Source of the DNA: Magallana gigas
Taxonomy: Eukaryota
Assembly (NCBI RefSeq): GCF_963853765.1
Contig: NC_088859.1
Span: forward strand, 8,804,001 to 8,868,000
DNA: 64,000 bases
Direction of reading: 5' to 3'
Positions 16,471 through 61,958 of this stretch are shown piece by piece. The translations under genes and the position numbers were made by a program. Within the stretch, counting starts at the first letter, position 1. Every line of letters begins with the position of its first letter. The notes beneath the pieces were generated by a model, which did not search any database, was not told where the DNA came from, and was given only the letters and a program-made list of their open reading frames with translations.

Positions 16471-16520
<50 letters not shown>

Positions 16521-28640: not shown

Positions 28641-28848
28641 GTTTGCAATATTAAGGTCACCTTTGTGACGTTGTCTTAATTCAGTACTAATCAGTAACAA
28701 TGAAGAGGTCAGGGTCGCAGGCCTAGTCACCAGTCTGAGCTCGTCACCTCAAAGCAAAATTACTGTTAAAAGATCACAGTGATTGCCACAGGCTCCTGGC
28801 ATTAAAATATTTCTTTCTATAGCTATAAGATTTTCCCTGCACTTTACA

Positions 28849-30509: not shown

Positions 30510-33500
30510 TCACGATATCATCTGGAAAATAAATCAAATTTGGTTAAAATGTAATGAATTTATTTTGTCCTTTGCTTACTACAATAATAAATCATACAAC
30601 AATATCATATACAATCTATATTTAAGGAATAAGGAATCATTCTTTGAGTATTATGAGGTGATAATTTTGGTCGGGGCATGGTCAAACCCAACAAAGCCCG
30701 AAGGGCTTTATGATAGATTTGACTACGCTCCAATCAAAGTTATCACCTCATAATATTCAAATAATGATTCCTTATTATTAATATTTATATATTTCCAATT
30801 TGTACACTTTAAAACAACATTTTAAAACCACTATTTTATCATATAGCACATGCTATTTATTACTACGTGGCACAGCAAACACTGTTTTTCAGTTATGCTA
30901 TAAGACACATCCATTTTCTGTCACTCATGTTTTATGAAGTTATTTGGCTGGAGGGTTCAAAAATTGATTTGTAGAGTTATTACAAAGAGAGTTGAAAATG
31001 TAAATATAATGTGTATCTACAACATATTCATGTGATATTATTATACATAACATAATATATATGCACAGAAAATACTCAATGGTGATAAAAAAATGTATTA
31101 GATAAAGCAATTTCATGAATATCGTTAAAAAGAACTATACTTCCATCAGATTATAAAATGATGAAGCATAAAATACCTCTCGAACTGTTTCTTTGATGAA
31201 ATCTTTTTTATCTGACAGATCAAATGTTGGATACTTTGAATAAACCTGTAAAAAAAAATAAAATAAAAAAATTAACTGAAATTTCTTAAATCTATAATGA
31301 CAAACATCTCATCATAATATTCAAACAATTCATTTGCCTCATTTGCATTATTTTTGTTTTTGAAAATGATACACACCAGAAGACCAGAAGAATGAAGCAA
31401 AGTAAGCTTAATCAGTTGTTCTCATTCCCATCTCTTACATGTACATAGTAAATAAATCAATCAGCATCTTTTATTAATGTTTCAAAAAAATAGTACATTG
31501 TAATAGCATTGAATGCCCTACACTTTTTTTAAAGACTTCAAACAGCATCTTAAACCATGGTCCCATCAAGTGTATGCGTTTATTTATGTACCAGGATTCA
31601 TGCATGTTTTTGTGGTGACCAGCAATGAAGTTCACAGCATAGTACTGACCTGTTTGACAACTGTTTTCATGGTCACTTCTTCTAAGTTGGCTTTGTCGAG
31701 GATCTTCTTTATTAAACCCTTCAATTCTTTATCCTATGTGGAATAAAAAGTTAATTAAGTTAATAAGAAAATATCAACAAACTCTCATCTCCCTATTCAA
31801 ACTTCTAAAATACCAGGGGTTTTCCTTGCTTAGTTTTGGGTCCGTTTACCGGACCCATTCCCAATAAAAAAAATTACCAATATTTTCCCAAAACAAGATC
31901 CAAATTTCCCAATCAAGTGTCAATAATTTTAAATATCAGAACATGTTCTGCTGGTATATAAAATGCAACTTAAACAGCTTTTTTCTTCATATTTGTTTAT
32001 TACTGAGCATAAATAATGGACCAACTAGGGGGCGACTTCAGTGACACTTTCGTTTTCCGTAACTTCGCCAGAATTTCCTCATACTGTGCATTGATTTCAA
32101 CCGATGTTAACTTCTTTATAGTGATGATTTTTAAAATTGGTAATTTATAATTAGTTAATAATTGTGCCTATTTAATGCTAAAATTATCATAAAATTGTAA
32201 ATCTGCAATTCTTTACAAAATTAAAGTTTCTCTGCATAATGGTTGAAATTAGGTCAAAGGGTAGGACTAAATACCCCAAATGCAAATATTGCCATTTTGC
32301 AAATAATTATTTTATTGTATGTTTGTCAATTGGCTTACATAATTAAGAAACATTTCTTCTATAAAAGGTAAAAATGCATGAATTTAATTAACTATTTCAA
32401 ATTGGAAAACTTTTAGAAATTTGAGGAAAAAAAGTACTGGTATTTATTTTAATCTTTGAATATAAGTGTGTGTTTGCTTCAATTTTATTTCAGTAACACT
32501 CATTATTTAAAAATCAAGTTTAAAATCTGTATAAATCATTGTTACATCATAAAATGAATTACATAAATTTCTGTAAGTTGTATTTTTTACACATTCTTTA
32601 AGCACAGTTTTACAAGTAGTTGTTTGGCTGTAGTATATATAGAACCGATCAGGTATAGACAGGTCATCGAAGAGCAATCAACCCTTTGGAACACAAGTTT
32701 TTGTTTAAAGGTACATGTGCGTACGATGAAGTATAATATGTATTTAAATTTAAAATTTACATTATATTTTGTAGTTATATTTGGAAATATACAATTATTG
32801 GGCCTAATTCAAGTTCATCGCTATTAAAGTCGCGTGCTGATTGTATATTACGGCGAATAAACTGGTTGATAGCTAACTCACTCTAACACCTATGTTGTTG
32901 TTATTTATAAAATACTTAGGATAAAAAACTTTATGTTCGGATGAGTGAAACGAAGGAGAACATAAGTCTTCCAAACTTCTCACTAATTTCCGTGGGGGAG
33001 AAGTATAAAATTTGCCACAGGTTGGTCCTCAAATAAAACTAGTACTTTTTTTGTAATTTTCCCAATTTGAACAGTTTACACGTGATTAACATGTCATTTT
33101 TCCCAATTCTACAGACCCTGGCCCCAGTTTAAAAACAGTAGGAAAACCCCTGAATACATTAACTCTACTTTGACATACTGAAGGGGGTTGTGGCTCCTTC
33201 TTCTTTGCAAGTGGTTCTTCATCAGAATCTTCATCACTCTCTTCATCTGATGACTCTGAAAGACATAACACTCTTTACAAAACCATTTAAAGTTTGGATT
33301 TGTTTTTATTTTATCATATTTTTTTGCATGAATCCTAAGAACGTTTGTTTGTGTCATATTTAAAAACGAATTTCTTATAGAAATAATATATAATTCACAA
33401 TCGGATTACAATAAAAACAGTCATCTAAAAATGGTAGGACCGGGGCATTTTTGTAGGTTAGGTTGGGTTACCCTAAACACACAACTTTTTTATTTGGCCC

Positions 33501-36500
33501 AATTACTTCTCATAATGCTGGTCAACAAAATGAAAGATACTAGTATGCACATGTCAGATAGAGAAATCATATTTGTTTTGTGCAATAGAACTTGAAACCA
33601 ATGAAAACTTATTTGAACCCATCAATTAATGTACATCAAAATCAATTACTGTTGTAACATACTACAGTAGATTGTTACTTAATTTCGCTATTTTCATCAA
33701 ATTGAGAATATAAAATCGCAAATGCCAAATTTTAATAATAGTTTCATAAAGTTTATATCTGTCAGACATTATTAAAACAAGATTTTACGATTCTTGAGAT
33801 GTGTTTCTCACAATTTTTTGCAAATATCAATTCCTCACATTAAATTAGGAATAGGAATCTACAGTATAGTTGTAAATACTATTTCGTTGGCTAAAACATA
33901 CCAATCTATCTACATGATTTTGAAATTACATCTTATACAGTAGTTTTAAAGTGTAACCCTACCCCCTAACCCAGTTTGTATGAGTAAGCTATTGAATCCT
34001 AATTTTTTGTACACTAAGCTTCAGATAATTTTAACTCAGTGACCATATGCAGTATGCAGACTTTAATATTGTATTTCTTTATACCTGCTTTCTTTGGTGA
34101 GGCTTTCTTTTCCTTTTTAGCCTCTTTTTTTGGAGCAGCCTTCTTTGCCGCAGGTTTCTTAGGTGTTTCTGTTTTCTTTTTCTTTGCTGGAGGAGTCTGA
34201 AAATAAAATTTAATCAGCTGTCAGCCAAATAAATAATGAGACAATCTTATGCTTGACTAACCTCTAACGCCCCATGAAATTAATTTTTAGATTCTCATCC
34301 CTGCCCGCCCCTCTGAAAATGGGCCGCCCCAATGCATTTTCTTTTACTTTGAAATTTTTTTTTAAAAAAAATCAGGCTCGGTATACAAAAAATTCTAAAA
34401 CATATTAATGGCTGCCTAAACATGTGGATTCAAGTCATGTTTCTTATCACAAGGATACAAATGTCTTCATGCATCAACAGTTAAGTCGAAATAAAATGGA
34501 ATTAAAAGATTACAACTGGGTTTGTGTACTCATATTAGCATTAACAACTTAAAAGAATAAAGCAGTTGTTATATCTAGAACATAAACGGTGAAAAGGGTG
34601 TTTTAAAAAAAAATAAAAATATAATAATATATAAAATCCGCCCACCCGCCCAATCTTTTTTGCAAATCAGGATGAGAATCTAAATATTAATTTTATATGG
34701 CCTAAATAGATATCATTAATAACAAAACTTTCATTTACTAAAATATGCTTATGAAAAAATACAACATTTAACTTCTCTTGATTGTTGAAAAGACAGCATT
34801 AATTCTTCACAGTTTATCATGAGCAACTAAAACTAAATCTTACATCTTCTTCCTCTTCTGCTGATGAAGCAGAGTCTTCTTTGCTTTCATCGTCTGATTC
34901 TTCTTCACTCTCAGAGTCCTCAGCGTCTGACGATGTTTTCTTTTTGCTGGCACTTTTAGGAGTTTTTTCCTTCTTTGCTACTTTTTTCTTTCCCTCGGCC
35001 TTGCCTCCAGTTTTTGACTTCCCTGGGTAGGAGCAAAACAGTTTACTAAATAAATACAGTTGTTTTACCGGTAACGAACCAGTTTGTGGTTTCGTCGTGA
35101 ATGCGACTATTATTATCGGAATTCCAAATGGTTTTATTTTTTGTTTAAATCATGTTTATTTGTCCTTCTAAAATGTAGTATTAAATTTCCGAAAAATATA
35201 AAGGATGAATTACAGAGATAGTAATTTCAACACTCCCTCCATTTTCCCAGTTTCGAATACGTTTTCCAATATCGAATCAAGCGCCCTCTATCATTTCTGA
35301 CCGAATATTTTGGGGCGGATTAATTTTAAAAATGATGCACTAGAGGTACATGTCAATGGATTTATAAATGAAGAAGGAAAAATAATTGTGAAAGTATGTT
35401 ATTCAAACAAATAATATGATCGTTATTTTTTTATCGATGTTATTCAAACAAATACTATGATCGTTATTTTTATCGTACCGTTTTCCAGTCAAATTGAAAC
35501 TGGACTTGAACAGTTTTCATTTTGCGTCACTTTGTGAAATTGAATTTTCATGAAAACACTTTATAATAGTAAATGATGATAAGTAGTTGCCATTTGCCAT
35601 TGTTTTGCCTGTATATCTATCAATATATCCAGCCAAATAATACTTCTGTCGCAATGAACCGACACTAGGAAAACTACACGTGGTTCTTTTTAAGTCGTAA
35701 TTTCATTCAAAGCTCCATTATTGTTTGATAAGATGCATAATCTTATTAAATTGATTATAATTACTAATTATCCACTAAAAAGGGGTCAATAACAAACTTA
35801 TTTTCATAGTTAGGTTTAATTGTTTTTACACTTTCGTTTTTTCTGCCTTGCACTTCCGGCAGTTCTTATCTGGGTCACTTTTTATTTAGTAAACAATACG
35901 ATAAATAACCGTGCAAATGTCAAGCAACTCAGCACACTGATAGAATATTCATAACTACGTAGCTTGGATTTTTAAAACCTTAAATTCGTTTTTCATCGAT
36001 AATTTTTCTAAAAATTATTCGATCCTGGCAAATATTCGTTATAGGTAAAACGACTGTATATTATTCCTCAATAACTATGAAAAATTAATATCAAGGTATA
36101 AAATCTTACTTTTTCGTTTTTTGGAAGCTGGAATGCCTTTTCCTGAGTCTTTTGGACATAAACAAAAATCAAGTATTCTCTCTGCTATTTCATCACGAAC
36201 TCCTTTTCTCTCTAAATCCAACACCTCACACACTTTCTTAAGGACAGCTACAGTGTTTCTTTAAGAGAAAATAACAATCATTATAAAAAGGGGGAAAACT
36301 CTACATTAAACACCATGTCAAAATCTTTATAATTTAACATTGCATCCATAATGCAACTAATATATAACAAAGTTCTCCATAAAAAGTAGTGGTATTGCTT
36401 ATATACTGGTGCATAAGAGTAAAAAAAAAAAGATTTAAAAAAAGAAAATAAATTCAATTTTGTATTCCTTTAGTTTATGTTCTTCCAATTTATTTCTAAA

Positions 36501-38221
36501 ACCCTGTAATTTTTTTTTTTATTGATTTATAACAATGATACATGTGTACCTGTATAGATGTATTTAATCTCATTCTGCGCTCGCCCTAATGGTCGCTCCG
36601 CAAAACATATTAGATTAAAGTTGAAATTAAAAATTTATACACTGTTTTAATGTGATTAATGGGACAATGAAATAAAGCAATGTATAGTCATCTGACACAA
36701 TGCAACACCTTAGACGATAAACATTAAAAAAGAATAAAGTATAATTCACTGTAACACTGAAATTCCCCCTCTCCATAATTACACAATCATACAGTAAACA
36801 GTAAGTACAAGTAAAGCAAGATGTGCAAAATTATATATAAGCTTACTTTTTTAAATTTGCCAATTTCTTTTTGTATTCATCATCACCCTTTTTAAATGTA
36901 AATCCGTTAAAGAGGCGCAAATTTTTTCTTATTAGTGTTGCCTGCAAAAAAGAGGAGAAAATTAACATCAGCAGGAAGAAGACAAATGGTATGTTGATGC
37001 AGTAACCAGGATATGATTTTATCAGGTACCTTTCCGGGACTGTTGAAGCAGAGTCTGTGTAAGGCTTTTAAATCATCAACTTTTCCTTTTGAAATATGAT
37101 ACTCAACTGTGAAAAAAAAACCCAGACAAATATTTCATGTTACATCAAATTACAACATAAAATCAAATACCTTGGAACATATACATAAATGTGCATAAGC
37201 ATAAACTATTATGTGATAAAATTAATTGCAACATATACAATCATAACACAAAAATTTCAATTCATTTACTAAAACAGATCATTTGCTATCAATTTCGCAT
37301 CTTGATAATTAAAAAAAAGAAAAATCAGGGAAAGTTTATTTCTATACACACGCCTGCAGTGTTGGACTTACTTCGTGCACAGTCTCCTAGTTTGTCACCA
37401 GAGCCTTCTCCCACCTCAAACTTTCTAGCTTCTTTTGGGACTACTTCTTGCATGCTGAGACGTTCTACTTTCTTTTTCTCTCTTCTTTTACCAGATTCAA
37501 TAATTACAGGGCGCTCTAAGAGACCAGCTGTATGTCAAAAATTATTTAAAACTTAGACATCTTCAAAGCAAAGCGTTCATGTAATAAAGTTCATCATGAT
37601 TATTGAAAAATGGTCTTTGATTGTATTCAGAAAAAGAACATCACGTTTTTCATAACCTGCAGTAAATGGTTAAGAGAATGAGATATTACGTTGTAATTCT
37701 TCCTCTTCCTCTTCATCATCATCATCACTCATTGCTTCTTCTTTCCTTTCATTCGTGGACTTTTTAGGAGATTTAACTGGACTCTTCTTTTCCTTAGCTT
37801 CATCCTCTGAGTCTTCTGATTTGGATGTATCATGAACTGGCTCTTTGTCTTCTTCCTGCAGAAAAAATGTGCACGTTATTTGTTAGCAGATCAGATGACT
37901 ATATCGAAGAGGTTGATTAACACGTGTTCAAGTCTTGAATACTTGGCAAAATGGCAGTCATTTAACCAAGGTACGGACATGAGATTAAGGGTGAAAATGC
38001 ATTTGTAGAGAGACAATTATTCACATGAGAAGATTTGCGACAAAACACGGGGCGAAAATGTAAACAAGGGTTCTCCACCCAAAGTGCAAATTAATTAATG
38101 AGAGTTTTAGATACGAAATAGCATAAAATGCTTTGCATATATATATTTTCTATCAGATACTAAGTGTTACCATCTCTTCTTTCTCTGGAGCAGATTCTCT
38201 GTTGTTCTCTACATCTGACAT
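30510..38221 (-). CDS. DEK: Chromatin protein DEK (~408 aa; SAP and DEK_C domains)
   Basis: 12 in-frame exons: 38221-38171, 37855-37690, 37527-37372, 37106-37030, 36941-36847, 36258-36110, 35022-34844, 34196-34085, 33255-33179, 31733-31650, 31245-31177, 30521-30510. Motifs GKRREKKKVERLSMQ, LKALHRLCF, RKNLRLFNGF, LKKVCEVLDLERKG, KILDKANLEEVTMKTV, DFIKETVREMIS*. Confidence 0.95.
31814..33152. mobile_element. CAGGG-terminated non-autonomous DNA transposon with 5-bp TSD (DEK intron)
   Basis: Perfect 13-bp TIR CAGGGGTTTTCCT / AGGAAAACCCCTG; AATAC on both flanks; subterminal TTCCCAA motifs near both ends. Confidence 0.75.
34267..34704. mobile_element. MITE-like element in a DEK intron
   Basis: Imperfect inverted ends AAATTAATTTTTAGATTCTCATCC / GGATGAGAATCTAAATATTAATTT with subterminal CCGCCC motifs. 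Confidence 0.6.
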
Positions 38222-38246
38222 GATGCTTGAGGTTTTAAATTCTTAC

Positions 38247-38282
38247 AATGGCGGCAAAATGGCGCTTATCCTACGAGCCAAT
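38247..38282. promoter_or_regulatory. DEK proximal promoter: YY1/E2F-like ATGGCG motifs and a CCAAT box
   Basis: AATGGCGGC (38247), AAAATGGCGC (38256) and CCAAT (38278), 25-60 nt upstream of the DEK ATG. Confidence 0.45.
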
Positions 38283-39891
38283 CAAAACTAAGATAACAAC
38301 CGCTCTTGATCATAACTTCAAAAAAGCCAAAATCTTGAAATTCGGATAAGTTGGCAATTTTACTTTTATAATAAGTCAGTAGATTCATTTTTTAAATTGT
38401 TGTTTGCTTGTTCGCTTTACATTCAAAAATATTTCTTAATACTGTTAACTTTTAAAATGGTTAAATATTTGGAAAACGAAGAACGACTTAATGTCATGTT
38501 TAAGCGTTAAAATGACGCAGATAATTTTGACAACCTCTGGCTGTTTTTCATCTTTCAGGAAAATATTGTTCACTTTGTTGATGTCTAATCTATTCCGGAC
38601 GACGACGTGAATAATCATATCACACTTACGTTTATTTTTTGAAATATGAATAATTATTTAGAAAAAAACAGTGTATAAGTGCGCTGCAGGTAACTTTTAT
38701 TTTCTTGTATTTATGTGAACATTGGTAAATTTTACAACGTTTTTGGCCTTTCATGTATTTTGAGATATATTTAAATGTATTCGACGAAACATGCGAAAGC
38801 AGTTTGTATAAATTTAATTTTCACCAACTTTAATGTGTTTCTAATGCCATTATGAGTGAATTAGTTTGCATAATAAAGTGAATGGATATGTCTCAAATCT
38901 AGTGCAATTATGTAGGAATGTTAGACACTTTGGCCCAAATACACCTTGCTCCACAGAAATTTTGGCCCAAACACACCTCTATCTAGCTGCAGGTCTGTAG
39001 TTTCTGCCCTGAAAAAAATCGGACGGACAACCTGGGAGCAATAACTCCTTACATGGTTGGCAATTTAAATTGCACAAAAACTTTCGCTAGTTTTGGGCCG
39101 ATTAATCTTATTTACAAACACATTCTGTTTCTATTCAATTCCTAAAAAATTTCCTGGACATCTTACTACAGAACATCACTGTACTTGCCTCTGATATTCT
39201 TTTAAACATTATCACCAGCCCCGTAAACATGGTAAAGGGGAGTGGTGCAGTTTGTTTACATATAAAAGTGGTGACTCTTGATCTGCATCCAAATTTAATG
39301 TACTTTATTTTCTGAGGTCGTTTTAGCCTTTTAGGTATTTAAGAGAGAGTCTGTAAAGCAAAGACATCAGTAGTAAATTGTCTGAAGAATTTAATGGTAA
39401 TAATTATTTAAACAGAATTTATGGAAAAGTAAGGTTATTAATCAGTCCAAGATTTTGCGCTCTGTAAATTGCAACTTTTTAACGCGAACTGGAATTTTTT
39501 TATGAACTGTAGGTCCAAGGTCATCAATCTAAATTTTTTTAGACCGGGAGCTAGAGAACTGCAGCTAACCTCTGCTCAGAAGGGTCGGCTCTAAATTGAA
39601 GAAATCTTGGCTAATACATAAGACACTTTGGCCCTGTCACATTTAATGAATTGTATAAATCTATATTATTTTGAATGATATATATATATATGTATATTGA
39701 TTACCTACAAAATAGTAAATTGATAAATGATCTGAACTCATATCTTTCAAAAATTATTGCCACTTGAATCAAAAATTCCTCTGATTCTAATTCTTGCTTT
39801 AACAAGGATCACCCACATCTTTAGAGAAAGAAACAACATTACAAATATGATCATAATGATTTAAATTTTGTTTATAAAATAATAAAGATGG

Positions 39892-40033
39892 TTTTTAGCT
39901 CACGGAGCTGAAAGCTCAAGTGAGCTATTCTGATCACATTTTGTCTGTCGTCCGTCTGTCTGTCCGTCTGTCTGTCCGTCTGTCCGTCTGTCTGTAAACT
40001 TTTCACATTTTCAACATCTTCTCAAGAACCACT

Positions 40034-40072
<39 letters not shown>

Positions 40073-40690
40073 CCTAAGGGGATTCAAAGTTGTGAAAATT
40101 AAGGACCACGCCCTTTTGCAAAGGGAGATAATTAGGAATTTATGAAAATTTTCGAGAAATTTTCAAAAATCTTCTTCTCATGAACCATAAGACTAGGAAA
40201 GCTGAAACTTATGTGAAAGCATCTTCAGGTAGTGTAGATTCGTGAAAATCATGACCCTCGGGGGTAGGGTGGGGCCACAATGGGGGGTCGAAGTTTAACA
40301 TAGGAATATATAGAGTAAATCTTTAAAAATCTTCTTCTCAGAAACTAATCACCCAGGAAAGCTGAAACTTGTGTGGAAGCATCCTCAGGTAATGATTCAA
40401 ATTTGTGAAAATCATGACCCCCGGGGGTAGGGTGGGGCCACAATGGGGGGTTGAAGTTTAACATAGGAATATATAGAGTAAATCTTTAAAAATCTTCATC
40501 TCAGAAACTAATCAGCCAGGAAAGCTGAAACTTGTGTGAAAGCATTTTCAGGTACTGTAGATTCAAAGTTGTGAAAATCATGACCCCTCGGTGTAGGATG
40601 GGGCCACAATGGGGGGTCGAAGTTTAACATAGGAATATATAGAGTTAATCTTTAAAAATCTTCTTCTCAGAAACTAATCAGCCAGGAAAG
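39892..40690 (+). mobile_element. Non-autonomous Helentron-like element carrying about 3 copies of the ~166-bp oyster satellite unit; 3' end missing
   Basis: 5' hairpin AGCTCAC..AGCTGAAAGCTCAAGTGAGCT, (GTCT/GTCC)n tract at ~39944-39995, tandem units with GGGGCCACAAT at 40271, 40434 and 40600 (periods 163 and 166). Confidence 0.85.
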
Positions 40691-41194
40691 CTTATTGATA
40701 TTCATAGACTGGCAAATTGGAAAGGTTTTTTCCCCCAAGATTTGCTCATTTGTGTATAACTGAGGCTGTTTCAACTGAAATATACAACCCTGGATGAAGC
40801 TGAACATGTACTGTAGATTTTTAATTAACATGAGGAATTGATATATGCATTAAATCGCAAGAAGCATATCGCAAGAAGCACATCTTGCAGATTTAAAATC
40901 TTGCTTTTATTTTTCGGACAGATGTAAACTATAACAAACTATTATAAAAATTCAGCATTTGCAGTTTTATATTCTCGTGATTTGATGCAGAACAAATAAG
41001 GAATCTATAGTATGTATTCATATCTATTAGCCAAGCTCTAGAGAGTTAATCATGAGTATCGATAGACCCCCACCTTGATCAAATCTGAGTTTGTCACGTA
41101 CTGCTTACAGTTCAAGTTCTTGTTACAATGACTCTTTATTCAGAGATGTGCATATTACTTGGATTTTACTTATATTTATGCAGATTGGAATAAA

Positions 41195-47400: not shown

Positions 47401-47466
47401 TTTTGAAAGGGGAAATTTTCTTTAAGGTGAATATCACGGGGTCTAAAAATTTTATACCCCTATACC

Positions 47467-47520
47467 GCATCTTTGCTAGCCAAGGGTTTCTAATCCGAAA
47501 TCCTTGGCTAGCAAAGATGC
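47467..47520. mobile_element. 54-bp palindromic mini-element with 6-bp TSD
   Basis: GCATCTTTGCTAGCCAAGGGTTTC-TAATCC-GAAATCCTTGGCTAGCAAAGATGC (23/24 arm match), flanked on both sides by TATACC. Confidence 0.85.
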
Positions 47521-48934: not shown

Positions 48935-51931
48935 TTAGAAGTCGGCATCAAGAGTAAACTCATGCTTGGAGGAATTATTTCCATTCATGACGCCCATTTT
49001 CTGGTATTCCCCGACACGCTTTTCAAAGAAATTTGTCTTTCCTTCCAAGGATATGTGTTCCATAAAGTCAAAAGGGTTCTCGACATTGTAAACCTGAAAA
49101 ATACAAGCAAGAATTAAGACCACTGTATTTAGATTCTTCATTTATCACAGCAATAAAAGAAAAAAAAGAAGAGACCATGTTTCAGTATCATTTATGGAAT
49201 GTGGACCTACCTTTTCACATTTAAGTTCTAGTAGTAGTCTGTCAGCAACAAATTCAATGTACTGTTTCATCAGTTTGCAGTTCATCCCTATGAGGTTACA
49301 AGGCAGAGCTTCCGTCAGAAATTCTTGTTCAATCTTGACGGCATCACAGATGATTTCATATATTCTTTCTTTGGATGGACGGTTTAAGAGATGGCTGAAC
49401 ATCAGGCAGGCGAAGTCGCAGTGTAATCCCTACGAAAAAATAATGGGGATGAAAATTTCTGAATACATAGCTATTAATCATTTTCAAATTAAAATTGGAA
49501 TTAATTTAATTTACAGAATTTGACTGGAAAGACAAGCTGCAATTCTTTAAAACTGAACTAAACTCATATAAGTAGGTTCATGCTTTTGGGCTTGTAGGTT
49601 TTTCATTTCTTTAGATATCAGCCAAAGCATATTTATGATGACCAAATATAAAAAAAATAATTAGAGACACAAAGGTTGTTGGTCCATACCTCATCTCTAC
49701 TAATCAGCTCATTACTGAAGGTAAGCCCTGGCATGATTCCTCGCTTCTTCAGCCAGAAGATGGCAGCAAAGCTTCCACTGAAGAAGATACCCTCCACTGC
49801 AGCAAAGGCCACTACTCTCTCTCCAAAGTCAGCTTCCTGGTCACCGATCCACTTAATGGCCCAGTCTGCCTTCTTTTTGACACATGGCAAGGTCTCAATG
49901 GCATTGAAGAGGTAATCTCTACAATAATTGTTAAATAAGATTTTATTTTCAAAGACTGACAAGTAGTATTTTCAGGGATGTAAATAACAGAAGAAAAAAA
50001 TTAGGAAATCAATTGTGAGTCTGTACTGATCTCTAAAGTGAACATTTTCATTTGTAAATCTGCTGACAAATCACATTCCTGATTTTTTTTCTTTTCTAGC
50101 ATTGTTTAGCAAATCACAGAAGAACGAACTATTATCTTATCTTTTTAATTAAGAAAAAAAAAACCATTTTGAATTAAGACTGATTTCTTGTCACACACAC
50201 CTCTGTTTGGGGTCTTTGATGTAGGTATCAATGAGTAAGCTGTACATTTCGGAGTGGATGTTTTCCATAGCAATCTGGAATCCATAGAAACATCGGGCCT
50301 CTGTAGCCTGTACTTCTTTACTGAATCTCTCCACCTGCAAGTCAAATAATGGTACACAATGAATTCATATTATTACATCAATAAGTATAGGGGGCTGTAG
50401 TCATTGCATACATGTAGCTCTATTATTTGTTGAATCTCAGAACAAAAAAGACTTTGATGGATTTTTATCGAATGAATATTTTTTTCTTCACATTGCATGT
50501 GTTTGAAAACCGTTCCACATACCAAATTTTCATTGACGATTCCATCACTGGCAGCAAAAAAAGCAAGAACATGGGAAATGAAGTGTTGTTCCTCGTCCTT
50601 CAGAGCTTCCCAGTGACCCAGATCCTTGGAGAGATCGACCTCCTCAGCAGTCCAGAATGAGGCTTCAGCCTTCTTGTACATTTGCCAGATGTCATGGTAC
50701 TGGATTGGGAAGACTACAAAGCGTCGGGGATTGTCCTCCAGCAAGGGTTCAACTTTCTTGGGCTTTCTGGATGTTTTCTTAATTGGCTAAAACAGGTACA
50801 ACACAGTTTAGTAAAAGGACAGACACACTATACTAGGCATAAGGAAATATGAATCTGTTTAATAGGACCATGAAAGAAACTTTCTTACCTCGTTTGTTTT
50901 TTCTATAATATTCTGTGGAATAGAAGAAAAAAAACTATATCATATCACTAGCAATTAAAATTATGGTTAAAAAAAAATTACTCAAACTTTTATGCACCAT
51001 ATAATTTTAAATTGTTGATGAGATTAACACCTGTATAGCTGCTTGAATGATATTTATTGCTTTTATCAAGTTTGTAAATTTACCCAACAACTGCAATTCT
51101 ACATCTTATAAATTAACTCACAGGTATATTGCTGTCTCCAAGAACTTTTCTGTTGTTTAAAACTGTGTTTTTTAAGTTTTCTGGCATCTGGAACAGCAAG
51201 AAATAAAGAATGCAATAAATCTCCATAATTTGTTGTAATTTTTACACCTATAACTGTAACCTATAAATCACATACTATGATAGCTGAATTTGTTCCAATT
51301 TCTTCATACAAACAGAAGAATATAAGTTTGAAAATGGTTTTAACTTCTACTCTGACGTTATTTTTTAGCAATAGCCTACGTTTCCGTACTGCAAGAAAAA
51401 AAACTTAACAGTTTTGCAAAACTAATATGACGTGTTTGTAAATGGCGCTAAAATTGGTCAACATCCGTAAAACAATATTTCCCTCCAAAATTACAAAGAC
51501 AAAGCATACAAACATTTTCGTGCTGCGGTGCATATTTCATTCAGATAAATAACAATTGCATAACTGTCCTAGGATAAAAATTGTATTGTATTAATAGCCT
51601 ACTATTCTCCTGAAAAATATTTAAATTTTGTGACTATCCCAATCGATAACTCAGATTCCGACAAATCAGTTTTTCGTTGTTCAATTTCTTTCTTTATCAT
51701 TGAATTTACAGTTATATATCAAAAGGATAAAACTAAATTCACAGCAAACAATACAGTCAATTATATTTATTTTGCATCAACGTAGATTATTTACATAACA
51801 CGTCTACTGACAAAGAAAATCTTGTATTTAAGCGCCAAGTGTTTCTTTACCTCGTTTTCGTCGTTAATCTTCGATTTCCTCAGTTGTGCAGTAATTTCTT
51901 GAGTAGCTCTTGGTGACCGGCTTGAAAGCAT
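48935..51931 (-). CDS. RRM2: Ribonucleoside-diphosphate reductase small subunit (~391 aa)
   Basis: Exons 51931-51851, 51187-51122, 50912-50889, 50786-50523, 50334-50201, 49918-49690, 49429-49211, 49093-48935. Motifs [89 protein letters not shown]. Confidence 0.97.
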
Positions 51932-52079
51932 CTTGACAAAATTAAGAAAATATCAGTATCTTTAAAGGAACAAGAAATCTGGATGTCGTTCTCTACTAAC
52001 TGAGGTGCCAATTGACGTTCAGTGCGTGAATCTCGAGTTAAAAACCGCGCTAAGCTTGCACCGGATTGGTTTTCATTGG
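51443..52079. promoter_or_regulatory. Cell-cycle-type motifs at the RRM2 5' end (E2F-like sites and CCAAT boxes)
   Basis: Minus-strand TTTAGCGCCA (51452-51443) and TTGGCGC (51838-51832) in intron 1; CCAAT/ATTGG at 52008, 52065 and 52075. Confidence 0.45.
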
Positions 52080-52506
52080 TCAATAATGGTATGTTCCGTC
52101 ATTGCGTTTCATAATCATCAATTTTTTTAAATATAAAAAATAGCTTTGTATCTTATCATTAGACATTATGTTGTATGGTTTTATAAGTTATAAAAATTTT
52201 GGCCCTTATTACAGAACAAATGCATTTCAACAAAAACAATAAGCACCCCTCTATTTTGGATTATTCCATAATTTGTTCTTAGCAACTTTGCACTATTTTC
52301 AAGTGGATATTCCTACACATTTTGCACAAAATCTTTTGAGTTAGTGTGTAAAAGATGCTAATATCTCAAAAGATAAAAAGCAATATATTTTAAATATGCC
52401 TTTTGGTAATAAAACACACCAAAATCTGTATAAATTATTCATCTATATGTTTACTATTTTATGTCGTAATTAGATCCGAAATGTCGTTGTACGTCATTGT
52501 TTAAAC

Positions 52507-55500
52507 ATGGCGGCTACCGATAGTATTCGTGTAGTCGATGATGATTATGTGAAAAGAATTCATAGTAGAACAACATCAGGCCATTTGCATAAGGGTAATT
52601 AGTTATACACTACACTAACATGTATGCAGAAGTAAAAAAAATATTTTTTCAAAAGTATGTAAGCATTTTAAATCAATGTTCAATACATCCAAACACTGAG
52701 AAAAGAGTAAGACAAGACGTATTTGTGTTGTAGGTCATGGCATTGTTGCAGCGACAGCCTCAATACCCAGTAAATATCAAACTATTGTGACTGACAATAG
52801 CGACAAGAGAGGATTCGGGGCACAAGCGAAGCGTTTTCAGTCAGATTTTGCCATGGTAAAGTTTAAGACCCGGTGTGTTTTAATATAAACCAGAGTACTT
52901 TTCAAATAACGTATGATTGGGCTATATATTAGAAAAAGGGTTTAAACATGATTGTTTTATAAACAAAGCAGTTTTTATGTACCAGTAACATGATAAATTA
53001 AGACTTTCAGCATGTTCTTGTCATAAATTTAAAAGAATTGACATATTCTGGGAATTATTCTTACATTAATTTTCATTTTTTTCAATGACTATAGACAGAT
53101 GCACCTGGTCCAGGCAGTTATGTGAAACATAATTCAGTAGAAAACAGTAGTGTTTCCTTTTCAAAGAAAGGAACAGGGGGATTTGCATCAAAGGTAATAT
53201 ATTCGTATTATAAAAATCAAATTAAGATCAAAATATTTTTGAAATACTGTTTTAGTACAAATTCCTTTCAAAATATATATCAATCTATGGCAATTTATTC
53301 ACGTTGAAATATGATATATAGCACTCATATCCATTTGAAACATGCGAAGAATATTCTGTATTTTTACAGTCCAAGAAAGGTTTGAAGTATGTCGGTACCA
53401 GTGCACCTGGACCTGGTGTCTACAGTTTGCCAAATATGTTGAGGACACAGAATGATTTCAATCGCTCAGAGGTAGGAAGGCTGTTCCAAAAACCCATAGC
53501 ACAAGCAACAGAACCGGAGAAGAGAGAAAAGAGACCAGCACCTAATCAATATCAAGTAATTCAAACTTTATCTTTTGTGTGTGTGGTTGGGGGGGGGGGG
53601 GGGGGGAGGGGGATTTATTATTTATATCTTGGTATTATTGTGAAAGGACATAAATATGTTGAAATATATACACATTTTAATGATGATGATTTTGTCCATG
53701 TTTGGTCAAATGAAGATGATGGCTTTCAAATAACTTTTATAAGTGAACTTCTTGTGGTACAACTCTTGTCATTTTTCAGGTTTTAAAAGTACAGTTGGGA
53801 AAAGCTAATAATGTGTCAGCAGATGCAGCTTTTAAATCAAGAAGTAAAAGAGAAGTTATCAATATAAAAGATATAGCCAGAAATCCTGCACCAGGTAATA
53901 AAGTAAAATCTTTTTTTTGTATAGCTTCTGTCTCAGCGAGTTTAAAAAAAATAAAAAATAAATATATGTTCAATGCTTGATAAAACAACATTCCTTCTGT
54001 AGAAGAACTTGTCTTAATTACTGATAAAATAAGTTGTTATTTTATTTTAAATTTAGGCCAGTATACAGTAAAAGATCATCTCCAACATGAAAGTGTGAAA
54101 GTTCCATTTTCTAGTTTCAAATCAAAATCAAAGCGACAGATGCAACCAAGTCCTGTTCCAGTAAGTATAAAAAGTCTCTTAATTTAGAGTAGTATTTAAT
54201 GTTGAATTAAATGGTACATGCCTGAATATTTTTGTCCCTAATCTATCAATGTTTGTAGGTGCCAGGACCCGGTGCATATAAACCAAATGAACCTGTTGAT
54301 CCTGCCAAAAAACAGCTTTTCCCGTGAGTAAAGAGTAATTTTTGTTTCCAACTTTTCCCTTTTTTTTGGGGGGGGGGGGGAGGGAGGTTGTGTTGATATA
54401 AAATGTAAAATATCCCATTTATGAATATTGATTATGTATACTTTATCATGTAAACTTGAAATAAAATAATATTTTTTAAAATAAAGGATATTTAAAAAAG
54501 TTGACTTGACTACATTAACAGGAGGAAGCACTACCTGTGTATCTCTGCCCCCGCCATGCCCCTACCGAACACCCCACCTCAGCCCGGACCCGCTGCCTAT
54601 GACCTGGTCGACTATGAGGGTCCTGCCAAACATTATATGTCTAGTTCTGCTTTTGTGTCCACAACCAGTCGATGGACAGGGAATGGTCCAACTGGAGAGT
54701 TACCTGGGCCAGGTGAGTTTGATTAATATCTAGACACGGATATCAAATGATATTATCTATGGCAGGGGCTGACAAATCCAATTGCCTGACACCCGGGGCA
54801 AGTGATTTTTCCGATCGGGCAAGTAAAAAATCGGTAGGGACTTGCCCGTGGGCAAGTAACTTTTTAAACTTTCGCATGTGTACTGGAAATGAAAATATTG
54901 TATTTCACCGAATATAATGCATACTTTTTTTTCTAGAAAACTCTTTAGGATCTAAGGATGCTTAAATTATACATCACAATAGGATTTTATTGATCATAAT
55001 CTGCTAATAGATAAATACTTATAAAATGGCAATTTAACGCCATTCTGAGCTGTTTATACTATGATCAACTTCTTTGAGCTGTGTTCACCTTCTCCATGTA
55101 CGCCGCTATAACTGATGATAAAAATAGATGTGTGCCTGTTATCACTCGCTAATCATAATCATAGCCTAGAACTTTTTTTAAATTAAAATATTAGGCCTAA
55201 TATGTTTATATATAATTAGTTTAAATTAAACAACTCACTGCAGATTTATTTCATCTTTATTTTTAACACTTCTTTGGCCATGAACACGCATTCATGCTTG
55301 TTACCTATTATCTCGGACATTCACTTAAGGTAAAAGAAATTATGAAGACACCGAAAACTGTTAATAAAATGTGTTTTTTTACCTTTACAACAAATCCAAC
55401 TAAATATCAATACGTAATGTGTTGTTTTTTTAACACATTCTCGTGAAAACCAAGAGGAAGAGATGTTGAATCAAAACTATATACCGGTATTATGAAGAGT

Positions 55501-57912
55501 ATCAAAGGTGGAAAAAATTAAAGTAAAGGGCAAAAACATCGTGTAGAATGTGTATTGTTTTCTTAATCACAATAAAGAATTTGGTTGGGCTAGTAGATAT
55601 TGAGGTAGGGCAAGTAAATTTTGCCTAGCCACTTGCCCGAGGGCAAGTGCTTAAAAAATGTATTATCAGCCCCTGCTATGGCGATATGTTAAGCAAGAAA
55701 ATTTAACAATTTTCCACTATATGCCACTAAATGTGAAGTTTTACTTTGTTCTGAATTAAGCTACTGATTTTTAAAGAAAACTTCATGAGTCATTTCTCTA
55801 TTTTGGATCACAAGGTTGTGATCCTTTGCATATTTTATGATCACTTCCCACTCTCAATCTAAAACAGTGATACAAGGCTGGTAACTCCTGCTCTCTATTT
55901 AACCTTGCTTCAGAACAGGAAAGGTTGTACTGCTTGTGTGCTGATGAACTATTTATACTCCCCCATTTTCTTCTGAAATTACCGGGTATTTAATCAAGAC
56001 AAGCATGCAACACCTGAGAGATATCTATGTAAAAGTTATCAAGCTCTTTTAATTATGTCCATTTTAATTTCCCAGAAAATCAAGGTGCTAATTAAAATAT
56101 TTTTATGGATCTCTTGTGAATTAGAAAATTCCCTCAGGAGATGAGTCTCAAGTAACAAAATGTCAGTAAAATGAAGTTCATTTTAATAGCAATGATTTTC
56201 TCTAGAATCATGCACTGAATTCAGTATGTTGTCCCCAGAAAACCCTACATCAGCAAACAATTAGACAACTTTTATTAAAAAAAAACCTTTTAACAAATTT
56301 TGTATGTGGCAATTACGTAATAAAATCTGTAACCTTGTGATCAGAATGAAATTGATGCTGGAGTAGTATAACATTCAGACTGTAAATTCTATAATAGGAA
56401 AGGGTTAAAGGTGCACTATAAATAATTACTGCCATTGGCATTTTGTGTGTGGGTGTGATGAAAATGTACTACCAGGTACTTTTGGGACACTGGGAAATGA
56501 ATTTCACTATAATGAGAAAAAATGATGTTAAGCTTTTACTCCACATCGAGTTGTTTTTACAGATTGATAAATTTTATTGACATGTTTTCATGTTCAATTT
56601 TTCAAACTGACATTTTTCAAACTGACATTGTTTTTGGACAAAGGTCTTTCCCCATATATTTAACACTGTTATACTTTCATGTTAAATACTGAAATCTGAT
56701 TGGTTAAAACGCAGTTCATAATCCGTTCTATTACCCTCAGCGTTAGCAATGCAGTTAGCAACGGGTAACATTACAAATTGTTACATGCGCGAAAATTATG
56801 CGCGTATGGTTCGCTGTAGAATTCACGTTATTCCTATATAAAAGCAGTAAAATTTTCTTAAAAATTAAGACATTCAGTATAACAAAATAAATAGTGCCTG
56901 TTTGGGAGGATAACAGTTGAAATTGCCACCCATCGAAAACCATTGTCAACTTCCGCTTTGCGTCGGTTGACAATGGTTTTCTCGGGGTGTCAATTTCAAC
57001 TGTTACCCTCCCAAACAGGCACTATTTATATAATAAAGGAGCCAGAAATGTCTGTAAATAGAAGATAAATATTGCTGTTTATGAAAATGAGTTTTCTGGA
57101 CGTGAAAACTTAGTTGTGTTCTTAATTTTATATAAATTTTTATATAAAAAAGTTTGACTTATTTCACTTGTACACCAGCTCTATTGATCATACATCTGAT
57201 ATTTAGAAATCATAGTTTAGTAGAAAGAAATTATTGGCATTATTTTTTTTTTTTTGAGAAAAAAAATTAATTTGCACTCCCCATTGCTGATATATATAGA
57301 CTGAAATCAACAGAAGTAACCAATATGCAAGAACTGAAAGCATTTGCAATATCATGCAATTTATGTAATTTCCATCCGATTTTAGTAAAATCAAAAAGTT
57401 AAGAAATATTATCCATTCATGTTTGGTTTCATCGATGCTCTTTTTAGTATTGATTTTTTCTCCTCATTTTATTGTGAAATGGCTTCCCCCAAATTTTGTC
57501 CCTAAGAGAGATAGATCATTATTCCTGATGACAAGCTGTCAGATTTGTCGACTGACACCGTCCTAGAGCCTCCACTTTATTGATTTTAGAACTCACAGAT
57601 CACAGAATCTCAAATTCCTTTGTGTAATATGATATCAGGAGTAAAATGACAATATTAAATTAATAACAAATGAAAAGAAATGGAGTAACTAAAGATGTAC
57701 TGTGGTTAAATATTTTATGAATGCCAAATGATTTTATTTTGAAAGACTGAAATTTAAATAAAAAAATACAGGAGTTATTATTATTTTTTTGTAAAATACT
57801 AATATTTTATTCTAATTTTTTCTTTTTTCCTTTTTTTTTTTTAGCTCATTATCGACCTGTTGAGCCAAATAAACAGTCATTTATTTACAACGCTGCAGGA
57901 AAATGGATTTAA
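52507..57912 (+). CDS. STPG1: Sperm-tail PG-rich repeat protein 1 / O6-methylguanine-induced apoptosis 2 (~345 aa)
   Basis: Exons 52507-52594, 52734-52855, 53095-53193, 53370-53555, 53780-53894, 54057-54160, 54259-54323, 54522-54712, 57845-57912. Repeated PGPGxY/PAPxxY motifs; SIPSKYQ, KRGFGAQAKRF, SFSKKGTGGFAS, SSSAFVSTTSRW, KQSFIYNAAGKWI*. Confidence 0.9.
54763..55675. mobile_element. CAGGG-terminated non-autonomous DNA transposon with 6-bp TSD (STPG1 intron 8)
   Basis: TIR CAGGGGCTGA / TCAGCCCCTG; CTATGG on both flanks; clustered GGGCAAGT/ACTTGCCC subterminal motifs at both ends. Confidence 0.85.
56660..57029. mobile_element. Dispersed element ending in a 143-bp palindrome (Crypton-like, family tentative)
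   Basis: Arms 56887-56950 and 56966-57029 (ATAAATAGTGCCTGTTTGGGAGG...CCATTGTCAAC) are near-perfect reverse complements; the left boundary is approximate. Confidence 0.6.
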
Positions 57913-61226: not shown

Positions 61227-61958
61227 TTACTGTTCCTTGAATTTTACAGAATCTTCTTGGAAGTGAATTTTCTGTTTAGAACTAAATGGCGGTTGAACAC
61301 CTTTCACTTTGGAGGTGGCGGGTATGGTCATCTCAATAGGACTCAGGGGTGGCTTCTCCTCTCCCGACTGAATCCGGATCGCCTCCTCGCCTATGTCATC
61401 GGAACACATGTTGGACATGAATGTCGGAAACATAAGGGCCACAGCCAGAAGGATTCCCCCGACACAGAACAATATCAGACCAACTAGCTTCAACAGATCA
61501 AGCGTGGTATTGAATCTGACAGCATCTTCGTCAACGTATCCGACGTTCTCTTGAACGTCACCCTTACGGATGATGGATTTCGTCGGTATGAAATACCCAG
61601 CCAGAATTGCAAGAACACCCAACACTAGAAGATTAACTCCAATCCATATACAAACTTTCAACCAAATCGGACGACATCGGCGTCGGCGCGCATGCGGGTT
61701 GAGGAGGTACCGGTTGTCATCATCTTCCTCGTAGATGCTGGGATCCTTGTACGTCGCCGAGTCGTAGAAGTTATGGAGGTAGGATCTCACGCCAAAGTAG
61801 TAAGGACACACCCCTTTCTTCTTCTCCGGCACATCATCGTCGAAGAACACCTTCCCTGTCTTCTTCTCTTTGGGTGTGGAGACTGAATCATGCGTTTCCT
61901 CGGCGTATTTCGGAGAGGTCGGTTTGTCCTTAAATAAACCCGTGCTCTCCTTTGACAT
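61227..61958 (-). CDS. NRSN1: Neurensin (vesicular membrane protein, 2 TM), 243 aa
   Basis: Intronless ORF with the family motif FGVRSYLHNFYD, TM1 WLKVCIWIGVNLLVLGVLAILAGYFIP, AVRFNTTLDLLKLVGLILFCVGG and TM2. An acceptor at 62020 implies an upstream non-coding exon. Confidence 0.9.
   Translation of the reverse strand: MSKESTGLFKDKPTSPKYAEETHDSVSTPKEKKTGKVFFDDDVPEKKKGVCPYYFGVRSYLHNFYDSATYKDPSIYEEDDDNRYLLNPHARRRRCRPIWLKVCIWIGVNLLVLGVLAILAGYFIPTKSIIRKGDVQENVGYVDEDAVRFNTTLDLLKLVGLILFCVGGILLAVALMFPTFMSNMCSDDIGEEAIRIQSGEEKPPLSPIEMTIPATSKVKGVQPPFSSKQKIHFQEDSVKFKEQ

What the first reader, a model, noticed from the sequence alone, without database searches (positions are those of the whole stretch)
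30510..61958. Five consecutive genes (DEK-RNF144-RRM2-STPG1-NRSN) map to one vertebrate paralogon
Seen: the five genes lie consecutively within ~31 kb, with DEK(-) head-to-head with RNF144(+). Recalled human positions: DEK and RNF144B are divergent neighbours at 6p22.3, NRSN1 is also at 6p22, RNF144A and RRM2 are at 2p25, RRM2B is at 8q22, STPG1 adjoins GRHL3 at 1p36 (GRHL1 lies near RRM2 and GRHL2 near RRM2B), and NRSN2 is at 20p13. These regions are 2R paralogues. Inference: the window keeps a compact bilaterian gene neighbourhood, with the DEK/RNF144 divergent pair possibly retained since the protostome-deuterostome split. Several members have DNA replication, damage or apoptosis roles, which hints at co-regulation.
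Basis: partly seen in the sequence, partly recalled or inferred. Interest (0 to 1): 0.7.

Follow-up and report, generated by a model that had tools for sequence, protein, structure and literature searches.

The report
Ancient DEK-RNF144-RRM2 gene neighbourhood in oyster
Five unrelated genes that sit side by side in the Pacific oyster are a leftover of a very old gene neighbourhood: its core (DEK, RNF144, RRM2) is also adjacent in a worm, a limpet, amphioxus and a sea star. This is a solid but ordinary example of conserved gene order.

Summary
DEK(-), RNF144(+), RRM2(-), an STPG1-like gene(+) and neurensin(-) lie consecutively at window 31.1-62.0 kb of an oyster chromosome. I found no RNA gene or other convincing gene between them.

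Conservation in other animals:
- **DEK/RNF144, head-to-head:** also in Lottia, the annelid Owenia and amphioxus. In Ptychodera the two are adjacent but annotated on the same strand. Papers list human DEK and RNF144B as neighbours.
- **RNF144/RRM2, tail-to-tail:** also in Owenia and the sea star Acanthaster.
- **DEK-RNF144-RRM2:** therefore best read as a trio inherited from the bilaterian ancestor.
- **STPG1/neurensin:** the same order and orientation in Lottia.
- **RNF144 to neurensin:** exactly two annotated genes lie between them in five more molluscs, judged from accession numbering. This fits the oyster order, but the two genes were not identified.
- **RRM2/STPG1:** about 480 bp between transcript starts. 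This junction was seen directly only in oyster.

Wider linkage: GRHL lies 582 kb away, and MYC and ODC are on the same chromosome. Syndecan, ATP6V1C, the E2Fs and TPMT are on other chromosomes.

Co-regulation is untested, and I found no conserved non-coding sequence or p53 site.

The verdict is a new member of a known kind (ancient microsynteny). The scan holds seven other microsynteny notes for this genome, none on this block.

The parts
31138..38221 (-). DEK gene, coding exons.
   Evidence: About 11 exon pieces were read. The SAP-region exon matches human DEK (PDB 2jx3, E=8e-13). A DEK_C Pfam match lies at 31620-31733 (30.1 bits, above the cut-off). The exons match DEK genes beside RNF144 in amphioxus and Lottia.
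38222..41194 (.). Divergent spacer between the DEK and RNF144 start codons (2973 bp). It contains a repeat or TE-like fragment at about 39900-40760.
   Evidence: Start codons were read. The spacer is about 3.0 kb in Lottia, 3.4 kb in amphioxus and 7.4 kb in Owenia. No convincing conserved non-coding sequence was found.
41195..44417 (+). RNF144 gene: an RBR E3 ubiquitin ligase with a C-terminal membrane anchor, in eight coding exons.
   Evidence: The exons align in order to sea-star RNF144 residues 7-298. The RING2 exon hits RBR ligases and the RING1 exon hits human RNF144A (6l99, E=3e-4). Named relatives are all RNF144A or RNF144B.
42183..42727 (+). Intronic minisatellite built from the exon-4 splice-donor region of RNF144. 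It is a separate finding of this scan.
Evidence: Tandem Repeats Finder reports periods of 21, 44 and 65 bp with 8-22 copies.
44418..48934 (.). Convergent (tail-to-tail) spacer between RNF144 and RRM2, including both 3' UTRs.
   Evidence: Stop codons were read. The same tail-to-tail arrangement occurs in Acanthaster with a 4.8 kb gap and in Owenia with a 6.7 kb gap.
48935..51931 (-). RRM2 gene: the small subunit of ribonucleotide reductase.
   Evidence: Three exons match Pfam PF00268 at E=2.6e-29, 1.3e-30 and 7.4e-19. Stranded poly(A) reads show joints 51187/51851 and 50912/51122 with GT..AG on the minus strand.
51932..52506 (.). Divergent promoter region shared by RRM2 and the STPG1-like gene. 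Two CCAAT boxes in RRM2 sense lie at 52065-52069 and 52075-52079.
   Evidence: RNA contigs of the STPG gene begin at 52477-52498. RRM2 read depth ends at about 51970-52000. The sequence was read.
52477..57912 (+). STPG1-like gene (sperm-tail PG-rich repeat protein). Exons are 52477-52593, 52733-52854, 53094-53191, 53368-53555, 53780-53892, 54055-54160, 54259-54323 and 54522-54712. The last exon starts at 57845.
   Evidence: GT..AG joints appear in three RNA contig sets and in raw reads. The loose end after 54712 maps uniquely to 57845. Family evidence comes from the atlas SHIPPO-rpt clusters at 0.96 and a PDB STPG protein at E=1.7e-4. Seven exons match the Lottia gene beside neurensin at 46-70% identity.
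61227..61958 (-). Neurensin gene: 243 aa, single coding exon, tail-to-tail with the STPG1-like gene.
   Evidence: Pfam PF14927 matches at E=1.1e-27. Named neurensin-1-like relatives occur in many molluscs. The identical protein is found in oyster sequencing runs.

Best explanation
The block is an inherited piece of ancestral gene order, not a functional operon-like unit.

Its core is two adjacent pairs that share RNF144. DEK and RNF144 are divergent, with start codons about 3 kb apart. RNF144 and RRM2 are convergent. This core was already present in the last common ancestor of protostomes and deuterostomes. Different lineages have since lost one side or the other.

In molluscs the block continues through RRM2/STPG1-like (divergent, transcript starts about 480 bp apart) and STPG1-like/neurensin (convergent), and then on to a PhyH gene.

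After the two vertebrate genome duplications the copies were lost reciprocally. That is why the human orthologues now sit in paralogous regions (2p25, 6p22, 8q22, 1p36, 20p13), and only DEK-RNF144B are still immediate neighbours.

Why the order persisted is inferred, not shown. The likely causes are slow rearrangement in these lineages and short, promoter-filled spacers in which breakpoints are harmful.
For: Gene identities.

DEK/RNF144:
- Lottia has a DEK_C gene(-) at 358-7014 beside RNF144(+) at 10001, with exon matches.
- Owenia has a DEK_C gene(-) beside RNF144(+).
- Amphioxus has six DEK exons(-) 3.4 kb from RNF144(+).
- Ptychodera has a DEK_C gene next to RNF144.
- In human, KDM1B, DEK and RNF144B are listed consecutively (PMC4846005).

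RNF144/RRM2, tail-to-tail: Acanthaster and Owenia, where the last RRM2 exon lies on the minus strand 6.7 kb after RNF144.

STPG/neurensin/PhyH: same order and orientation in Lottia and oyster.

RNF144 and neurensin are three locus tags or accession numbers apart in Sinanodonta, Potamilus, Patella caerulea, Mytilus edulis and M. coruscus.

Wider linkage in oyster: GRHL lies 582 kb from the window, MYC is on C7 and ODC is on C7.

Human 2p25/8q22 paralogy, including RRM2/RRM2B and GRHL1/GRHL2, is stated in PMC2227947.
Against: - No single non-mollusc shows all five genes together.
- Acanthaster has a Patched-like gene, not DEK, upstream of RNF144.
- Amphioxus has a Quaking-like gene after RNF144, and Lottia has an unknown 559-aa gene there.
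- In Lottia the two halves of the block are on different scaffolds.
- In Pecten no STPG exon lies within 10 kb of neurensin. In Mya the RNF144 and neurensin accessions are far apart.
- The two genes between RNF144 and neurensin in the five extra molluscs were not identified.
- Ptychodera DEK is annotated on the same strand as RNF144, and I could not see its exons in the fetched stretch.
- Orthology of the STPG gene to human STPG1 rests on family-level evidence and on my memory of the human sequence.
Confidence: 0.8

Rival explanations
1. The genes are kept together by selection for shared regulation. This would be a replication and DNA-damage neighbourhood in which DEK, RNF144 and RRM2 respond to common enhancers or to E2F- or p53-type inputs, so that breaking the block would misregulate them.
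For: - Two of the four junctions are head-to-head, the class enriched among conserved and co-expressed pairs (Irimia et al. 2012, PMC3514665).
- RRM2 and the STPG gene have transcript starts only about 480 bp apart.
- The DEK-RNF144 spacer is about 3 kb in oyster, Lottia and amphioxus.
- From general knowledge, not tested here: vertebrate RNF144A/B and RRM2B are p53 targets, and DEK and RRM2 are E2F-regulated.
Against: - No p53-type site occurs in the block. There is one match in the whole window, at 4009, against 1.9 expected by chance.
- No convincing conserved non-coding sequence links the DEK-RNF144 spacers of oyster, Lottia, amphioxus, Owenia and Ptychodera.
- Several lineages have broken one side of the trio without losing the genes.
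- STPG1 (a sperm-tail repeat family) and neurensin (neuronal) have no obvious functional tie to replication.
- The RNA runs were picked by sequence content, so their depths cannot be used for co-expression.
Confidence: 0.17
2. The match is only macrosynteny: the genes share an ancestral chromosome, and their tight adjacency in oyster is a local accident or arose independently in each lineage.
For: - Oyster chromosomes are known to keep ancestral linkage groups, so consecutive genes often map to one vertebrate paralogon.
- GRHL, MYC and ODC share chromosome C7 with the block at distances from 0.6 to 36 Mb.
- The RRM2/STPG1 junction is directly seen only in oyster.
Against: - The same immediate neighbours, mostly in the same orientation, recur in Mollusca, Annelida, Cephalochordata, Hemichordata and Echinodermata.
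- With on the order of a thousand or more genes per chromosome, a given gene has a given neighbour by chance in under about 0.2% of cases per lineage. This is my order-of-magnitude argument, not a computed test.
Confidence: 0.03

Closest known systems
Conserved ancient microsyntenic pairs (CAMPs) of Irimia et al. 2012, Genome Res (PMC3514665)
   Same: These are unrelated, non-paralogous genes that stay immediate neighbours across protostomes and deuterostomes. Head-to-head pairs are prominent among them. That paper counts 593 bilaterian pairs covering about 12% of ancestral genes.
   Different: I could not check whether DEK-RNF144 or RNF144-RRM2 is in their list, because the supplements are not held. 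A full-text search found no paper that describes this block. Here two pairs share a middle gene and form a trio.
Bidirectional (divergent) promoter gene pairs
   Same: RRM2 and the STPG1-like gene are divergent, with transcript starts about 480 bp apart. CCAAT boxes lie between them.
   Different: The DEK and RNF144 start codons are about 3 kb apart with a repeat fragment between them, and their transcript starts were not mapped. Shared promoter activity was not tested for either pair. Conservation of the RRM2/STPG1 junction outside oyster is only indirect.
Genomic regulatory blocks (a developmental gene plus bystander genes that carry its enhancers)
   Same: Gene order is conserved over a very long time. 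A developmental transcription factor (GRHL) is linked on the same chromosome, 582 kb away.
   Different: None of the five genes is a developmental transcription factor. Their introns are short. No conserved non-coding elements were found. GRHL is far outside the block.
Vertebrate 2R paralogon 1p36 / 2p25 / 6p22 + 8q22 / 20p13-q11 (families ID, SOX-C, MYC, GRHL, RRM2, KLF10/11)
   Same: The human orthologues of all five genes lie in these regions. The 2p25/8q22 paralogy, including RRM2/RRM2B and GRHL1/GRHL2, is published (PMC2227947).
   Different: In oyster, other families of this paralogon map to chromosomes C5 and C3 rather than C7: syndecan, ATP6V1C, an E2F and 14-3-3. The human regions therefore mix at least two ancestral linkage units. 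That 6p22 and 8q22 belong to one post-2R copy is my inference.

Membership tests
Conserved ancient microsynteny (bilaterian adjacent pair) | Orthologues are immediate neighbours in both protostomes and deuterostomes | tested here: met
   DEK/RNF144 is adjacent in oyster, Lottia and Owenia, and in amphioxus and Ptychodera. RNF144/RRM2 is adjacent in oyster and Owenia, and in Acanthaster. This is not met for RRM2/STPG1 or STPG1/neurensin, which are seen only in molluscs.
Conserved ancient microsynteny (bilaterian adjacent pair) | Relative orientation is conserved | tested here: met
   DEK/RNF144 is head-to-head in oyster, Lottia, Owenia and amphioxus. RNF144/RRM2 is tail-to-tail in oyster, Owenia and Acanthaster. 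The exception is Ptychodera, where DEK is annotated on the same strand as RNF144. I could not confirm that from exons.
Conserved ancient microsynteny (bilaterian adjacent pair) | The genes are not paralogues, so this is not a tandem-duplicate cluster | tested here: met
   The five genes have five unrelated domain sets: SAP/DEK_C, RBR (IBR), Ribonuc_red_sm, SHIPPO repeats and Neurensin.
Bidirectional promoter pair | Divergent genes with transcript starts less than 1 kb apart | tested here: met
   This holds for RRM2/STPG1-like. STPG contigs start at 52477-52498, and RRM2 reads end at about 51970-52000. For DEK/RNF144 the start codons are 2973 bp apart and the transcript starts are unmapped, so that pair is inconclusive.
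Genomic regulatory block | A developmental regulator gene plus bystander genes that carry conserved non-coding enhancers | tested here: not met
   No developmental transcription factor is in the block, and GRHL is 582 kb away. blastn of the DEK-RNF144 spacers across five species gave only 19-21 nt matches, the best of them inside a repeat.
Vertebrate 2R paralogon (1p36 / 2p25 / 6p22 + 8q22 / 20p13) | Human orthologues of all five genes lie in mutually paralogous regions | tested here: inconclusive
   Papers give the positions of DEK, RNF144B, NRSN1, STPG1, GRHL3, RRM2, RRM2B, GRHL1/2 and NRSN2. The human position of RNF144A and the four-way paralogy rest on my own knowledge. Oyster markers split between C7 (GRHL, MYC, ODC) and other chromosomes.
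RNF144 subfamily of RBR E3 ligases | RING1-IBR-RING2 followed by a conserved C-terminal segment and a single membrane anchor | tested here: met
   All eight exons align in order to sea-star RNF144. The pre-anchor exon is 100% identical and the anchor exon 77-79% identical. Named full-length relatives are all RNF144A or RNF144B.
DEK | A SAP-box region plus a C-terminal DEK_C domain | tested here: met
   The SAP-region exon matches human DEK structures at E=8e-13. The DEK_C match is above the Pfam cut-off.
STPG1 (as opposed to other sperm-tail PG-rich repeat proteins) | One-to-one orthology with vertebrate STPG1 in a family tree | not tested
   Only family level is shown, together with exon-by-exon orthology to the Lottia gene. 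Length limits on exon queries kept full-length named relatives out of reach. The window gene was not among the genome's top SHIPPO-rpt Pfam matches. The C-terminal similarity to human STPG1 is from my memory only.

The most novel reading that the evidence does not exclude
DEK<->RNF144-><-RRM2 could be an ancient regulatory unit for replication stress. In this reading the three genes share control elements inherited from the bilaterian ancestor. After the vertebrate duplications the p53-inducible copies (RNF144B, RRM2B) and the S-phase copies (DEK, RRM2) divided an originally common response. The tight RRM2/STPG1 promoter would be a second, independently constrained element.
Probability: 0.1. 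Interest if true: 0.6.

Novelty: new member of a known kind. Interest (0 to 1): 0.36.

Why it matters
Deeply conserved gene neighbours are rare markers. They help reconstruct ancestral chromosomes, help assign vertebrate duplicates to their pre-duplication locus, and point to places where gene order may be under constraint.

This block adds a well-documented trio, DEK-RNF144-RRM2, seen in five phyla. I found no paper that describes it. It also gives a clean picture of how one ancestral locus was scattered over human 2p25, 6p22, 8q22, 1p36 and 20p13 by reciprocal gene loss.

It does not change current views. Hundreds of such pairs are already known, and no functional link among the genes was shown.

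Tried and rejected
- **p53 sites:** a scan for p53-type response elements found one match in the window, outside the block, against 1.9 expected. I dropped this line.
- **Conserved non-coding DNA:** blastn of the DEK-RNF144 spacers of five species gave only 19-21 nt matches, the best inside a repeat.
- **SHIPPO-rpt in the own genome:** the Pfam scan did not pick up the window gene, and Pfam on single STPG exons gave nothing. Family membership had to come from the atlas, the PDB and the Lottia orthologue.
- **STPG exon as a pivot:** in an unannotated ENA assembly the gene is spread over more than 8.5 kb, so neither RRM2 nor neurensin was within reach (L024). A second hit had no DNA on hand.
- **Uninformative loci:** in Lingula the contig ends 1 kb after RNF144 and nothing lies upstream. 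Pecten has no STPG within 10 kb of neurensin. In Sinanodonta the introns are too long for 10 kb flanks.
- **Ptychodera DEK orientation:** tblastn, tblastx and reading the frames showed no DEK exon in the 2.6 kb available.
- **Literature:** the supplement tables of Irimia et al. 2012 are not held. Searches for DEK+RNF144+synteny and for STPG1+RRM2 found nothing relevant.
- **Left out:** All protein work was done exon by exon.
Full report
**What the window is.** The window is G000:C7:8804001-8868000, from a 564 Mb genome in 29 contigs. It has 30-39% G+C and no N. The neurensin protein it encodes is found identically in contigs of oyster sequencing runs. The nearest named relatives are Ostrea and Saccostrea.

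**The five genes are real.**
- DEK lies on the minus strand, with about eleven coding exon pieces between 31138 and 38221. Its SAP-region exon matches human DEK structures at E=8e-13. A DEK_C Pfam match above the curated cut-off lies at window 31620-31733.
- RNF144 lies on the plus strand at 41195-44417, in eight exons. The exons align in order to residues 7-298 of the Acanthaster RNF144 protein. Exon 7 is 100% identical over 30 residues, and the membrane-anchor exon is 77-79% identical. A full HMMER search with the RING2 exon returned full-length proteins that their sources name RNF144A or RNF144B.
- RRM2 lies on the minus strand at 48935-51931. Three exons match Ribonuc_red_sm at E=1e-19 to 1e-30.
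- The fourth gene lies on the plus strand from 52477. RNA contigs from three runs and raw poly(A) reads show eight GT..AG introns. A loose end after 54712 maps uniquely to 57845, which gives a last exon ending at 57912. Its family is sperm-tail PG-rich repeat (SHIPPO). The evidence is the atlas score of 0.96, a PDB STPG protein at E=1.7e-4, and a Lottia orthologue that carries a faint SHIPPO-rpt hit. I did not show with tools that it is the one-to-one orthologue of vertebrate STPG1.
- Neurensin is a 243-aa single-exon coding sequence at 61227-61958 on the minus strand.
- No tRNA or Rfam family lies in the window. I saw no convincing ORF in the spacers.

**Anatomy of the block.** The orientation pattern is DEK(-), RNF144(+), RRM2(-), STPG(+), neurensin(-), so head-to-head and tail-to-tail junctions alternate. 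The DEK and RNF144 start codons are 2973 bp apart, with a repeat-like fragment between them. RRM2 and STPG transcripts start about 480 bp apart. Two CCAAT boxes in RRM2 sense lie at 52065-52079.

**Conservation of DEK/RNF144.** I used full-length RNF144 proteins from named genomes to fetch 10 kb flanks.

| Species (locus) | Neighbour upstream of RNF144 |
|---|---|
| Lottia (L022) | DEK_C gene(-) at 358-7014, head-to-head with RNF144(+) at 10001; six oyster DEK exons match it |
| Owenia (L020) | 433-aa DEK_C gene(-), head-to-head with RNF144(+) |
| Amphioxus (L016) | six DEK exons(-) in a 385-aa gene that ends 3.4 kb before RNF144(+) |
| Ptychodera (L019) | DEK_C gene as the upstream neighbour, annotated on the same strand; I could not see its exons in the 2.6 kb available |
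| Acanthaster (L015) | a Patched-like gene, not DEK |

For human, one paper lists KDM1B, DEK, an snRNA pseudogene and RNF144B consecutively at 6p (PMC4846005). The head-to-head orientation in human is from my memory.

**Conservation of RNF144/RRM2.** In Acanthaster a 398-aa Ribonuc_red_sm gene(-) starts 4.8 kb after RNF144(+), and five oyster RRM2 exons match it at 63-84% identity. In Owenia the last RRM2 exon lies on the minus strand 6.7 kb after RNF144. Owenia therefore has the same DEK(-), RNF144(+), RRM2(-) trio as oyster. Amphioxus has a Quaking-like gene after RNF144, and Lottia has an unknown 559-aa gene there. One pair or the other occurs in both protostomes and deuterostomes. The simplest reading is that the trio was present in their common ancestor and was broken on one side in several lineages.

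**The STPG/neurensin side.**
- In Lottia the order is PhyH(+), neurensin(+), STPG(-), with seven STPG exons at 46-70% identity to oyster.
- In oyster the PhyH orthologue lies about 14.8 kb beyond the neurensin start, on the same strand. Order and orientation are therefore the same, although I did not check what else lies between them in oyster.
- Direct tests of the RRM2/STPG junction in other species failed for lack of reach.
- Indirect evidence comes from five GenBank-annotated molluscs: Sinanodonta, Potamilus, Patella caerulea, Mytilus edulis and M. coruscus. In each, the RNF144 and neurensin proteins are exactly three locus tags or accession numbers apart. That leaves two genes between them, as in oyster, but those two genes were not identified.
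- Against this, the Lottia halves are on different scaffolds, Pecten has no STPG within 10 kb of neurensin, and the Mya accessions are far apart.

**Wider linkage.**
- On the same oyster chromosome (C7), a Grainyhead gene lies 582 kb from the window. Its DNA-binding exon matches human GRHL1 at E=5.6e-12.
- The only Myc_N match in the genome is at 44.6 Mb on C7. A multi-exon ODC gene is at 30.6 Mb on C7.
- Other markers of the same human regions are elsewhere: syndecan and ATP6V1C on C5, E2F genes on C5, C3, C9 and C8, TPMT on C3, and 14-3-3 genes on C3 and C5.
- Of eight marker families tested, three are on C7, which is 9.5% of the genome. The human paralogon therefore seems to combine at least two oyster linkage units.

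**Human positions.**

| Region | Genes | Source |
|---|---|---|
| 6p22.3 | DEK, NRSN1, RNF144B, E2F3, ID4, SOX4 | PMC4131128, |
| 1p36.11 | GRHL3, STPG1, ID3, E2F2 | PMC8269103, |
| 8q22 and 2p25, described as paralogous amplicons | YWHAZ, GRHL2, NCALD, RRM2B, KLF10 and YWHAQ, GRHL1, HPCAL1, RRM2, KLF11 | PMC2227947, |
| 20p13 | NRSN2, SOX12 | PMC6625104, |

A fish paper mentions rnf144a together with a chromosome 3 region that holds klf11, grhl1, id2 and sox11 (PMC11507226). The human position of RNF144A itself is from my memory.

**Mechanism.** What is shown is inheritance of gene order. What is inferred is why it persisted. I favour passive retention in slowly rearranging genomes, helped by short spacers full of promoter sequence. 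I favour this because several lineages have broken either side of RNF144 without losing the genes, and because I found no shared element. There is no p53-type site in the block and no convincing conserved non-coding sequence in the DEK-RNF144 spacers. Co-regulation remains possible, especially for the 480 bp RRM2/STPG pair. The RNA runs were chosen by sequence content, so they cannot be used to compare expression.

**Novelty.** Ancient microsynteny is well known: Irimia et al. 2012 count 593 bilaterian pairs. I could not check their lists, and full-text searches found no paper on this block. The scan itself holds seven other microsynteny notes for this genome, none on this block. I rate this a new member of a known kind, of modest interest.

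Noticed in passing
L020:18508-19267 (Owenia fusiformis RNF144 locus): A 63 bp x 12 tandem array at 96% identity. Each unit is the in-frame 3' end of RNF144 exon 7 and ends in its splice donor (CAG|GT). In oyster the same gene carries an array built from the exon-4 donor (window 42183-42727). Two splice-donor minisatellites sit in one gene in two phyla. This could be chance, an assembly artefact or something real.
   Followed up: partly
window 8154-17313 (+): A multi-exon TPR protein gene that reads like GTF3C3 (TFIIIC102). I identified it by eye only and did not test it. By my memory its human counterpart is at 2q33, so the conserved block would end at DEK on this side.
   Followed up: no
window 4249-5081 (-): Exons of an immunoglobulin-domain protein, judged by eye only from the translations.
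   Followed up: no
window 39900-40760 and 28806-29024: Fragments of a repeated element that share a peptide motif of the NFNQTWHKAS type. One fragment lies inside the DEK-RNF144 spacer, next to a short tandem run that reads SVCLSVRLSV.
   Followed up: no
window 54713-54806 and onward: In RNA run X1 a contig runs on past the exon-8 donor of the STPG gene, while runs X2 and X8 splice to 57845. This suggests intron retention or an alternative 3' end.
   Followed up: no
G000:C3:38205208-38227298: Three tandem, apparently intronless TPMT-family ORFs of 235-286 aa open frame, within 22 kb.
   Followed up: no
G000:C6:5792682-5793323: An ornithine/arginine decarboxylase match in a single 353-aa open frame. 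It appears intronless, unlike the multi-exon ODC gene on C7 at 30.59 Mb.
   Followed up: no
G000:C5 8.27-38.2 Mb: Chromosome C5 holds ATP6V1C (8.27 Mb), an E2F (22.19 Mb), a second CP2-family gene (23.49 Mb), syndecan (26.73 Mb) and a 14-3-3 gene (38.22 Mb). These are families whose human members lie in the same 1p/2p/8q/20 regions as the block's orthologues. This hints that two ancestral linkage units are merged in vertebrates.
   Followed up: partly
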